Position numbers and translations under genes: made by a program. The notes beneath the pieces were generated by a model. That model made no database searches. It saw nothing but the letters and a program-made list of their open reading frames with translations, and was not told the origin of the DNA. DNA of 63,986 nt, counting the filler, from Reticulomyxa filosa (lineage: Eukaryota; Protista; Foraminifera): NCBI GenBank assembly GCA_000512085.1. It is 19 parts of 19 records of this genome, joined end to end, with 100 filler letters (N's around TTAATTAATTAA, not from the genome) between each part and the next. Parts side by side here need not be neighbours in the genome. Positions count along the whole stretch, not along the records: positions 39,240 to 42,605 come from ASPP01009843.1; 18 more parts are not named here. One strand, 5' to 3'. Positions 39,901 through 44,257 of this stretch are shown here, in pieces. Within the stretch, counting starts at the first letter, position 1; every line of letters starts with the position of its first letter.

Positions 39901-40221
39901 TATTACTCAATTAAAAAAAAGGTTAAACATATCTTTTTGAGCAGAAAAGATCAACTCTGTTTGTATTAATCTCTGGATTGATTAGACAAATGCAAGGACG
40001 TTTCGAGTTTTGTTGCAATGCAAAGTTATCAATAACAAAACAAAACAAAAAACAAATTTCAAGGCATTTACATTTCCAAATCGAATTCAACTAAATAAAT
40101 ACCCAAGCTAGAGACAATTGTTAGTTTTAAGTCTCTTAACATATTTCAAAATGTTGGTTAGCAGTAACCAAAAAATAAAAGAATTTTTTGCTTTGTTTTC
40201 CCTTATTTTACAACACCTTAC

Positions 40222-42501
40222 TCAAAACACAGTGCCATCAGAACGAATTTTAATTGGAGGAGCGCCACTTGGACGTAGTTTGAAAGCTAATTCACGTCCT
40301 GCTCTCCACGTGCCTCCTTCCAACACTTGGGACATAGGAAATTCGGCTTTTGTCTTTCCAAGTTGTTTCCTCACATGGTCTGCAATTTCGTCAATCAAGG
40401 CAACTGTCAAAGCTCTCCATTCCACAATCAATTCCGATCCAACGTGATACGTCATATCAGTGTCCACAGTGTCTTTTATGACAATCACGCCAGTGTCAAT
40501 GAGGAGACCTCCATTTCTGTATTCGGGCAAGCAAGTGAGATCGTCCAAATGTTCAAATTTGATTCCATACGTAGTAAACTCTTCTACAATCGAATAGCAC
40601 AACCACTGAATCAATTTATGGAATGGCACCATATCTGAGCCAGGTTTTCCAATGATCTTCAAATGGTTATGTGACCACACATCACCATTACGCACCCTTG
40701 ACACTCTTTGTGGCCAAATGGGTTCCAGTCCAATGACTAAAGCCTGCCACAATACTCGCAGCGACACTACTTTATCTTGATTTGCTTTCGAAAGAACAAA
40801 GTCCAGCAAATTGCCTGGTCGGTGGACCTGATTAACAATAAAAAAAAGATGAGTCATGTCAGTTGATCAATATACATACATACTATGATTAAAAAAATCG
40901 TTTACAAATTTCGAAACTTCGTGACCAAAATATTCTGGAAATTTCTCCAAAGCCTTTGCCAATCGCTTCAGCAAGCCAGCACGGCCATCCAGACCAATCA
41001 TAGGATTTGACTTTGAGGCTTGGAATCCCACCTTCAACTCTTGCACGGTCAGTTTTTGCAAACCTCGCGAGTTGACACGCGTTTTCAAAGCCTCGTCGCT
41101 GCTGAACATACCATCCAAAAACATTTGCAAAGAGGCAGCACCAATACCCTCACTGCGGGTCCACGTTCGTTGATGACGATCTACATATTTCCAATCGTCT
41201 CCTGCCCCAGCATCCAACAGCACCGAGACAAATGTCAAATCGATCAGTCGTCGAGTTTGTTCTCTTTTTTTTTTTTTTGATCGTTAATATACATTTACAT
41301 ACATAAGATGTATGCATAATAATGTGTGTATAAATATGTATATGTGTATTTGATTGAACCACTCCAAGAAATGTTTGACAAGTCTCAACTCTCGATCGAC
41401 TTCATGAAGAGCCCACTTTTTTCTCAAGTTATCAATGACCTTGGAATCAAAGTGTCGGAAGCGGCTATGCATAGGCACCTTCAAGTCCGGATAATGTTTT
41501 TTGATGCATGCGACTACTTCCTTGGCGCACCCCTCGATTTTGTCCGGGTTTACTCCAAAGTACTGCAGTTCGTCCTTTTTCGCCATTTCATACATCCGAA
41601 CACTTTGTTTGCGAACCGTCTGCAGCAGCCGTAGTTCTTCAATCAGTTCGTCTCCCTTCATTTCCTCGGCATGATATCTGTCATGGGTGAGAGAGAGAGA
41701 AAAGGTACGCACAACACACATGAATCCATTCAAGTTTGTTCATCATATATTGACTCGTTTTACAATTAAAAACTGTATACACAGTTGTTTAATCTTTTTT
41801 TTTTTTTTTAAAAAAACAACAACATACCCGGACATAACCTTGGCCGAGATTTCCACCAAAGCGTGCTTGGGGACATACATATTGGGAAGCGGGACGCGTT
41901 GTTGTACGCGAATGCCCGCCGACACAATACCGTCATACTTTTCGTTGCTCATCGAGAGCAACCAATCAATGCGTTCAATGCCGAGCCAATTGAGCACATC
42001 TCCCATCATATTTTGAAACCTGGCATCGCGAATGCCGGCAATGCTTTCCGTTTGATAGAAATACGTTTCCGCGCTGTCGCCACCACTCTGATTTTTACGC
42101 GCATTGTACACACGGAACTTGGTCACTTCTCCCAACGATCGTCCCTCTTTGCGGAAGTACACAATCAGGCCTACGCCTCCTCGTTGCGCGCATTCAATAC
42201 AGCTCTGCAATCCAAACACTAAGTACGGACGACACGTGCAAATGTCCGTCCCAAACACATCCGATCCGTTGCACTCGTCGTGCACCCTCACCGCCACTTC
42301 GCACTTCTTGTCACGGATCTTACGAGGGTCCCCGAAAAAGTAACACGTCAGGCCCCCGACCTGTGGCAGGTACGTACGTATACTCTTGTCTTTCAAGTCG
42401 CGGTTTTTCGTGTACTTGTACAATGCCTCGCGTAAGTCTGTCTCCGTTAGCTCAAGTCGATCCGCCAATGCCGGCAAATTCCACGCATATTGTACTGCTA
42501 C
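40222..42501 (-). CDS. URC1 (GTP cyclohydrolase II-like) - URC4 (DUF1688) fusion protein, 5'-partial, spliced
   Basis: URC1 motifs WNLPALADRL, YLPQVGGLT.YFFGDP, RVHDECNGSDVFGTDICTCRPYL, YFRKEGRSLGEVTK. Intron 41827-41678 joins in frame to URC4 motifs VPMHSRFRHF, RRLIDLTFVSVLLDAGAG, SEG...ASL.MF, PFHKL.QWL.YS, LPEYRNGGL.ID, EWRALTV, LEGGTW.AGR and SDGTVF*. Confidence 0.92.
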
Positions 42502-44257
42502 CTGGAAAGAGAGAGAAATGAGGGAGGGGAGGGGGGAAAAAAAAGGGGTGTTTTTTTTTTTTTTTGTTATTATAATTATTACTTTATTATTTGCAGTACA
42601 TCAAANNNNNNNNNNNNNNNNNNNNNNNNNNNNNNNNNNNNNNNNNNNNTTAATTAATTAANNNNNNNNNNNNNNNNNNNNNNNNNNNNNNNNNNNNNNN
42701 NNNNNAAAAAAAAAATTAAAAAATTAATAAAAAAAAAAAAAATTTAGGGACTTTCAAAACTAAAATTTAAAATTTTTAATGTGCCAATCAATCTCCACAT
42801 TGATTAAAAATCCTTTATCTTCAATGTATTGTCGACTGCATTCAATAGAAACAAACATAAAGGATGTGTCCTCGCATAAATTCAATATGCCATAAATGTT
42901 ACAACACATATATATATATATATATATATTAACACTAGATTTGATAGGACTATTCAACATAGCCCTTTACATACACATACATTAAATTTCCAATTATTAA
43001 TTCTTGTTTGTAGCACACACGATAACAATGATTGAAAAATGAACAGGATTATCACTGTTATGGAAAAACAATATAAACTCTTATTAACAAAATGGTATTC
43101 TAAACATAAACAACAACTCTATTTGACAGAAACTGATGCAATAATACAAATTCTAAATTCATGTGTCACTTTTTTTAAATCGCCTCAACGCTGAAAGTTT
43201 CTAGAATAAGTTTTTATGCTATAACTAATCTATTTCTTTTATGCTGACAAAGCATAAAAAAACTCTAGGTTTTATTTGCTGCTCAAAGCTTACAAGTTTT
43301 GTAGACTTTTCAAAAATGACACAATCTTGTAATTGGTGTCATTTTTATGAAAAGTTCAGCGTTTGTTTTATTCAAACAATAAATAGATACAAGCGAATGT
43401 ATGGTCTCTTTCGCTATATTTTAAAAAATATTTGTGCTAATGTTCTTCATTAAATAAAATTTTTTAAAATAATCATTGTGCTAAAAAGAAAAATTAATTA
43501 TTCTGAGTCAAATATCACTTAAGACTATTATAACATATTGCATTCTTTTGGTCAAAATATTTGAAAAAAAGAAAAGAAGCTGATTAGTCATTTTACTGGC
43601 AAGTCAGCTGAAATGTTGTTAAGGGCTAGTACAAGTCCTTTAATGAGCTTTCTGGTCGTGGAATAGTGATGTTTACAATGTTAAGCCAAATTTAATCACT
43701 TGTAATTCTTTGTTATCTTGTGCAAAATGAGATGGTTTGATATTGATGTCATAATAATGCTTTTCCAAATTTTTTTTTACAAAATGTCACTTGAACAGAG
43801 ATTACAAGTTGCGTAAAATGTTTTAAAACGAAAAAACTAGTGGAAAACACCGTTAAAAACTCCAGCCATTGTATAATGCAAAGAAATGCAAAGGATGAAT
43901 GGGTGGACTTTGTTTAAAATATCATAGAATTCTGTGTTTTTTTTAAATCTCACTAAAAAAGAACTTGTTCGCAAGTCTTGATACAAGGGCTTTGTACGGG
44001 CAAAAACTAAATGTGAATACAATTAAAGCTACATTGAGAAGATTTACACAAAGTGTAAATTATTTGAAGATTTTTAATAACTGATTTTTAACTGTCATTT
44101 TTTAAGAAACAAGTTAATTCAAAAAAAAAGGTGTGCAATTTCTATATTTTATTCAACAAATGAAAATTGTCCATGTAAAATATCTTCGCTATTTTAAAAG
44201 GGCCGCGTCCCCTTTTTAAAAAAGTTAAACTTAACAAACTTCAGCAACATTAACAAC

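What the first reader, a model, noticed from the sequence alone, without database searches (positions are those of the whole stretch)
40222..42501. URC1-URC4 gene fusion: two uracil-catabolism enzymes in one polypeptide
Seen: the URC1-like frame ends ...EISAKVMS-GG|gtatgt (donor 41827) and resumes after cag|A-TAT-CAT (acceptor 41678), giving SGYHAEEMKGDELIEELRLL... with no stop, straight into DUF1688. Known: in Lachancea kluyveri the URC pathway uses separate URC1 (GTP cyclohydrolase II-like) and URC4 (DUF1688) genes plus UPRT (URC6), and the S. pombe urg1/urg3 homologues are also separate genes. Inference: this is a Rosetta-stone fusion implying consecutive steps or channelling (ring opening of a uridine nucleotide, then breakdown of the ribosyl-urea intermediate), and a URC-type pyrimidine nitrogen-salvage route in this protist. 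The 5' end is missing, so further fused domains such as UPRT are possible. I cannot verify whether this fusion is already reported in other protists.
Basis: partly seen in the sequence, partly recalled or inferred. Interest (0 to 1): 0.85.

Follow-up and report, generated by a model that had tools for sequence, protein, structure and literature searches.

The report
Fused uracil-breakdown enzymes in a foraminiferan
A foraminiferan gene joins two uracil-degrading enzymes into one protein; the fusion is real but common in microbial eukaryotes and some giant viruses, and it gives a testable reaction for the poorly understood second enzyme: cutting urea off ribose phosphate.

Summary
The fusion is real. 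The piece is Reticulomyxa filosa contig ASPP01009843.1. Four minus-strand exons (42501-40222) encode the C-terminal half of URC1 (UTP cyclohydrolase type) and a complete URC4 (DUF1688) in one frame. A 97%-identical contig from a probable RNA run joins 41828 to 41677 exactly, and a paralogue has the same junction intron. The fusion is not special to this protist: 208 fused proteins were recovered, from Rhizaria, a dinoflagellate, a centrohelid, Ancoracysta, a red alga, giant-virus contigs and one bacterial-looking contig. GenBank already calls this locus one hypothetical protein (RFI_13605), with wrong splice sites. No paper describing the fusion was found. An upstream UPRT is unlikely: none of the 208 has one, and in bacterial operons UPRT follows URC4. 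The useful addition concerns URC4. Its predicted fold matches the nucleotide N-glycosylase Qng1 (Z 28), with Lys199 and Tyr232 kept, Asp231 replaced by Glu, and a free C-terminus. URC4 therefore probably hydrolyses 5'-phosphoribosyl-urea, the presumed URC1 product, to urea and ribose 5-phosphate. This is inferred, not assayed; channelling is untested.

The parts
41828..42501 (-). Exon 1 of the visible gene: end of GTP_CH_N plus the GTP cyclohydrolase II-like catalytic domain of URC1. Earlier exons (about 130-140 aa expected) lie off the contig.
42232..42273 (-). Three zinc-ligand cysteines (HDEC...CTC), aligned to E. coli GCH II Cys54, Cys65, Cys67
   Evidence: residue roles from own knowledge
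42019..42108 (-). Tyr (42108-42106) and Arg (42021-42019) aligned to E. coli GCH II Tyr105 and Arg128
   Evidence: residue roles from own knowledge
41678..41827 (-). Intron at the URC1/URC4 junction, 150 nt, GT-AG, phase 2, with an in-frame stop if retained
   Evidence: same position in paralogue RFI_27134
41390..41677 (-). Exon 2: last URC1 residues (GYH), short linker, start of URC4/DUF1688
41264..41389 (-). Intron, 126 nt, GT-AG, phase 2
40918..41263 (-). Exon 3: DUF1688 positions 88-202 (DAGAG and RSEG motifs)
40828..40917 (-). Intron, 90 nt, GT-AG, phase 0
40222..40827 (-). Exon 4: DUF1688 positions 204-420. Holds the Qng1-equivalent Lys (40617-40615), Glu-Tyr (40524-40519) and the C-terminal GTVF, then TGA.
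42502..42605 (-). 3' part of an upstream intron, cut by the contig edge
   Evidence: X2 loose end continues as NEDGSVNTTK; same acceptor in RFI_37409

Best explanation
A spliced gene encodes one bifunctional protein of about 770 aa for two consecutive steps of URC-type pyrimidine breakdown. The URC1 half is a zinc cyclohydrolase that opens the uracil ring of UTP and releases pyrophosphate and a three-carbon fragment, leaving 5'-phosphoribosyl-urea (inferred from homology to UrcA; the reaction details are recalled from the literature). The URC4 half is a Qng1-like nucleotide N-glycosylase that hydrolyses the ribose-nitrogen bond to give urea and ribose 5-phosphate (inferred from fold and residues). 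The order URC1 then URC4 follows the bacterial operon and leaves the URC4 C-terminal carboxylate free, which Qng1 needs for activity. Shown: gene structure, splicing in close relatives, domains, motifs, distribution. Inferred: both reactions and the physiological role.
For: Junction-spanning contigs. Junction intron shared with paralogue RFI_27134, 88% identical in exon 1. Match to PDB 7EJ3/7EEV at E 3.5e-80 against 1.9e-10 for E. coli RibA. Zinc cysteine motif in 202 of 208 fused proteins. URC4 model of a relative (pLDDT 93.9) matches Qng1: Foldseek E 2e-9, TM 0.63/0.81; Z 28.4 and 27.8, rmsd 2.9, next hit Z 10.8, aligned through to the C-termini. Pfam Q_salvage hits 85 of 109 URC4 domains. 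K199, D231, Y232 of Qng1 align to invariant K, E, Y (PMC9881137). 202 of 203 fused proteins have no extension beyond the DUF1688 end, nearly all ending in G-x-x-F; Qng1 is inactivated by a C-terminal tag. 63 of 80 bacterial loci read URC1-URC4-UPRT. The yeast literature assigns ribosylurea-to-urea to URC4 (PMC7530994).
Against: No enzyme assay. The 5' exons of this copy are missing. The sequence alignment to Qng1 is weak alone (E 0.055), identity is 16-18%, and the key Asp is Glu. The primary URC papers could not be read. UPRT, urea amidolyase or urease and the 3-hydroxypropionate step were not looked for in this genome. The supporting runs are of relatives and only guessed to be RNA.
Confidence: 0.72

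Rival explanations
1. The fusion is real and in the URC pathway, but URC4 has another substrate or chemistry, for example dephosphorylated ribosylurea, or an opened-ring intermediate that still carries the three-carbon unit.
For: The yeast summary names ribosylurea rather than its phosphate. Qng1 also turns over the nucleoside. The phosphate-pocket residues were not mapped. Asp is replaced by Glu.
Against: Qng1 prefers the 5'-monophosphate (PMC9881137). No phosphatase recurs in the three-gene bacterial operon. Direct fusion fits direct hand-over.
Confidence: 0.17
2. The fused subfamily has moved to another job, such as clearing damaged or modified pyrimidine nucleotides or recovering ribose phosphate, rather than nitrogen salvage.
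For: The fused URC1 N-terminal region is shorter and differs from the canonical one. Fused proteins form a separate branch. Giant-virus copies have no UPRT next to them.
Against: The catalytic domain is about 55-58% identical to operon-encoded bacterial URC1, with the motifs intact.
Confidence: 0.08
3. Two adjacent genes, or a mis-prediction: URC1 ends at the stop in the retained intron and URC4 starts separately.
For: An in-frame stop lies at 41745-41743 and ATGs are present early in exon 2.
Against: Exact junction-spanning contig; conserved junction intron in a paralogue; 208 continuous fused homologues, including an Ammonia transcript and intron-free viral genes.
Confidence: 0.02
4. The cyclohydrolase half is a riboflavin-pathway GTP cyclohydrolase II (RibA), as some database names suggest.
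For: Pfam PF00925 hit and automatic names 'GTP cyclohydrolase II'.
Against: PRK07198 scores 323 bits against 65 for RibA; the GTP_CH_N segment is present; it is fused to URC4.
Confidence: 0.01

Closest known systems
URC pathway genes URC1 and URC4 of Lachancea kluyveri; urg1 and urg3 of Schizosaccharomyces pombe
   Same: Same two families (GTP_CH_N + GTP_cyclohydro2; DUF1688) (PMC2174524, PMC3869809).
   Different: Separate genes in yeasts, one polypeptide here. The fused URC1 has a shorter N-terminal region.
Bacterial URC1 (UrcA, PRK07198; PDB 7EJ3/7EEV, recalled as UTP cyclohydrolase of Zhang et al., ACS Catal 2021) in the URC1-URC4-UPRT operon
   Same: About 55-58% identity over the catalytic part, same motifs, same gene order.
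   Different: 0 of 80 sampled bacterial loci are fused; UPRT is a third gene downstream and is not part of the eukaryotic fusion.
Qng1/QNG1 (DUF2419), queuosine-5'-monophosphate N-glycosylase, HhH fold
   Same: Same fold (Z 28), Lys, acidic residue and Tyr at the same places, aromatic last residue at a free C-terminus (PMC9881137).
   Different: 16-18% identity, Glu for Asp231, Phe for Tyr323, about 90 residues longer, different pathway.
GenBank RFI_13605 (this locus) and RFI_27134 of R. filosa; CEP02690 of Plasmodiophora brassicae; KAJ8908582 of Rhodosorus marinus
   Same: Already deposited as single proteins with both domains.
   Different: Labelled hypothetical or 'GTP cyclohydrolase II domain-containing'. 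The RFI_13605 model translates intron sequence at all three introns.

Membership tests
URC1/UrcA UTP cyclohydrolase | GCH II-like domain preceded by GTP_CH_N; best match PRK07198 rather than RibA | tested here: met
   the curated cut-off of 403 bits is not reached (323) because only half the domain is on the contig
URC1/UrcA UTP cyclohydrolase | Three zinc cysteines plus the Tyr105 and Arg128 equivalents | tested here: met
URC1/UrcA UTP cyclohydrolase | Complete N-terminal GTP_CH_N domain | tested here: inconclusive
   off the contig; relatives have a shorter, divergent version
URC1/UrcA UTP cyclohydrolase | Hydrolyses UTP | not testable with these tools
   needs an assay
URC4/urg3 (DUF1688) | Full-length PF07958 match ending at GTVF | tested here: met
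   exons 2-4 cover profile 2-420; model of a relative matches the URC4/urg3 Atlas cluster at TM 0.94
Qng1-like HhH nucleotide N-glycosylase (works like) | HhH two-lobe fold with the Qng1 C-terminal tail | tested here: met
   model made from relative P0269, not from the window's own joined sequence
Qng1-like HhH nucleotide N-glycosylase (works like) | Ribose-positioning Lys199, catalytic acid at 231, Tyr232 | tested here: met
   K, E, Y invariant in 109 URC4 domains and present in the window; Glu, not Asp
Qng1/QNG1 family (membership) | PF10343 above its cut-off, with Asp231 and C-terminal Tyr | tested here: not met
   window exon 4 scores 24.7 against a cut-off of 25, but DUF1688 242; Glu and Phe instead. 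Not a Qng1, only a relative.
Riboflavin GTP cyclohydrolase II (RibA) | RibA models above cut-off | tested here: not met
   65 bits against 148; 52.5 against 205.85
Complete URC pathway | UPRT, urea amidolyase or urease, and 3-hydroxypropionate step in the same genome | not tested
   only this 3.4 kb contig and three related contigs were seen; no UPRT on the two searched
Complete URC pathway | Growth on or induction by uracil | not testable with these tools
   needs culture or expression data

The most novel reading that the evidence does not exclude
An old, apparently undescribed bifunctional UTP-degrading enzyme, spread across several eukaryotic supergroups and captured by giant viruses, hands phosphoribosyl-urea directly from a zinc cyclohydrolase to a Qng1-like N-glycosylase with a glutamate in place of the catalytic aspartate. 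That would define DUF1688 as a second nucleotide-hydrolase branch of the HhH glycosylase fold and make the URC route a common source of urea in microbial eukaryotes.
Probability: 0.4. Interest if true: 0.62.

Novelty: new variant of a known kind. Interest (0 to 1): 0.45.

Why it matters
The URC route is known from yeasts and bacteria, and its URC4 step has no characterised mechanism in the papers that could be searched. The fusion, the operon order and the Qng1-like fold together give a specific reaction, specific residues to mutate and a practical warning (do not tag the C-terminus). The spread of the fusion suggests the pathway is common in protists and is carried by some giant viruses, which bears on nitrogen recycling in plankton and sediments. 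The fusion itself is less surprising than first thought: the genes are neighbours in bacteria and the architecture is already in public databases.

Tried and rejected
Earlier findings of the scan were not open. A single-sequence structure of a full fusion failed (pLDDT 33) and its fold search was meaningless, so domain packing and any tunnel are untested. A single-sequence PDB search with URC4 found nothing; only the profile and the structure reached Qng1. Scans with single queries found nothing in viral and genome contigs; alignments were needed. Phage collection: only weak GCH II-type matches. Paper searches found no description of the fusion or of a DUF1688-Qng1 link; subscription papers are not covered, and two primary URC papers were not held. 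The careful tree and the one-clade test did not finish, so the number of fusion events is open. UPRT fusion rejected as unlikely. GenBank's splice sites rejected.

Full report
Source and gene structure. The 3366-nt piece is identical to Reticulomyxa filosa contig ASPP01009843.1. One gene lies on the minus strand: exons 42501-41828, 41677-41390, 41263-40918 and 40827-40222, with GT-AG introns of 150, 126 and 90 nt. The exons total 1914 nt, that is 637 codons and a stop. Each intron holds an in-frame stop. The last 980 nt hold no comparable frame and no contig coverage.

Splicing. Contigs from three studies, 92-97% identical at best, cover the exons and not the intergenic DNA or the interior of intron 2. 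X1 record 5 continues from 41677 to 41828 with no letters between, with 285 and 414 nt on the two sides. X3 gives 12 nt across the same joint. Introns 2 and 3 are supported too. These runs are guessed to be RNA and come from close relatives, so they show that the joined form exists, not its level in this strain. A paralogue, RFI_27134, has introns at the same three places with unrelated intron sequence.

Domains. Exon 1 matches GTP_cyclohydro2 and the tail of GTP_CH_N, PRK07198 far better than RibA, and PDB 7EJ3/7EEV at E 3.5e-80. From memory these entries are the UTP cyclohydrolase UrcA of Zhang et al., ACS Catal 2021; only the citation could be seen (PMC12507026). The alignment to E. coli GCH II places Cys, Cys, Cys, Tyr and Arg at 54, 65, 67, 105 and 128 (their roles are from own knowledge). 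Exons 2-4 cover DUF1688 from position 2 to 420.

Distribution. A search with exon 1 returned proteins that continue into DUF1688. Two searches with such proteins gave top-120 lists almost wholly of this architecture; 208 fused proteins were collected. Named sources: Plasmodiophora brassicae, Paulinella micropora and P. chromatophora, Lapot gusevi, Mataza, Euglypha, Ammonia, Yihiella, Pterocystis, Ancoracysta twista, Rhodosorus marinus and a Euplotes focardii library; transcriptome labels can reflect prey or contaminants. Intron-free copies sit on two IMG/VR giant-virus bins and on a 363-kb, 24% GC contig with MutS and Erv1/Alr neighbours. One divergent copy lies on a bacterial-looking contig. 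The ESM Atlas has an 81-member cluster with this architecture. GenBank already models this locus as one 691-aa hypothetical protein, RFI_13605, though with intron text translated. In a quick tree of the URC1 part, 31 fused eukaryotic and viral rows form one branch (SH-aLRT 96), apart from the canonical unfused proteins; two other virus-like fusions and the bacterial one fall elsewhere, and the number of origins is unresolved (48 long-branch, truncated or redundant rows were left out of the second tree).

No UPRT expected. In fused proteins the part before exon 1 has a median of 142 aa, and none matches UPRT. The R. filosa relative RFI_37409 (90% identical) starts at Met about 130 aa upstream and uses the same acceptor. 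Of the best 80 bacterial loci none is fused, 63 read URC1-URC4-UPRT and 9 more URC1-URC4. The fusion thus keeps the operon order, and UPRT would be expected downstream, where the gene stops. A separate UPRT-URC1 fusion exists in another lineage (P0009).

What URC4 probably does. A model of the URC4 domain of the closest complete relative, built on 109 sequences (pLDDT 93.9), matches Qng1 structures at E 2e-9 and TM 0.63/0.81, and at Z 28 with rmsd 2.9, followed by HhH DNA glycosylases at Z 8-11. Qng1 releases queuine from queuosine 5'-monophosphate using Asp231, Lys199, Tyr232 and its C-terminal carboxylate; a C-terminal tag inactivates it (PMC9881137). The profile alignment puts Lys, Glu and Tyr at these positions (weak alone at E 0.055); they are invariant in 109 fused URC4 domains, present in 73 of 75 bacterial URC4 frames and present in the window. 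The structural alignment runs to the last residue of both proteins, and 202 of 203 fused proteins stop there. The yeast literature assigns URC4 the step from ribosylurea to urea and calls the earlier steps uncharacterised (PMC7530994). A GCH II-type enzyme leaves a 5'-monophosphate (own knowledge). The simplest reading is that URC4 hydrolyses 5'-phosphoribosyl-urea to urea and ribose 5-phosphate. It also explains why URC4 is always last in the fusion (208 of 208, although the searches were seeded with that order). All of this is inference.

Verdict. It is a variant of a known pathway, widespread and already visible in databases, and not found described in the searchable literature. Channelling, growth on uracil and the rest of the pathway in this organism are untested. 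The main value is the testable mechanism for DUF1688 and the reach of the pathway into protists and giant viruses.

Noticed in passing
L004:3178-5442, L005:2565-4826, L009:8001-10262, L002:10001-12148: Giant-virus bins and virus-like contigs carry intact, intron-free URC1-URC4 fusions; the L004/L005/L009 type falls on the eukaryotic fused branch. A possible auxiliary metabolic gene; no paper found.
   Followed up: partly
L006:3085-4110: A giant-virus bin has a stand-alone 341-aa URC1 with the short N-terminus of the fused type. Several similar 335-350 aa proteins (P0014, P0026, P0029, P0032, P0038) exist; fission or the pre-fusion state. A cytidine-deaminase-like ORF lies nearby at L006:1195-1593 (by eye, not tested).
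   Followed up: partly
L013:205-2655 (P0009): A different fusion, UPRT-URC1, 816 aa, on a JGI contig; its URC1 is of the canonical type.
   Followed up: partly
L003:10001-13096 (P0062): Bacterial-looking contig with a divergent 1031-aa URC1-URC4 fusion that has about 230 extra N-terminal residues; an 846-aa protein with a GTP_cyclohydro2 hit lies at L003:4854-7394 on the other strand.
   Followed up: no
L001:3789-5005, L012:58-2316, window 40222-42501: R. filosa has at least three copies, 78-80% identical to each other in DNA over exon 1 (RFI_37409, RFI_27134, RFI_13605); all three GenBank models translate intron sequence.
   Followed up: partly
P0001 (810 aa), P0036 (590 aa): P0001 has two URC1 units in tandem; P0036 has a CDP-alcohol phosphatidyltransferase domain before URC1, possibly a gene-model artefact.
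   Followed up: no
window 41678-41827, 41264-41389, 40828-40917: All three introns are multiples of three, each with an in-frame stop; the paralogue's junction intron is 107 nt, so this is probably chance.
   Followed up: partly
window 40185-40221: Contigs from three runs end 23-37 nt after the stop, which suggests a very short 3' untranslated region.
   Followed up: no
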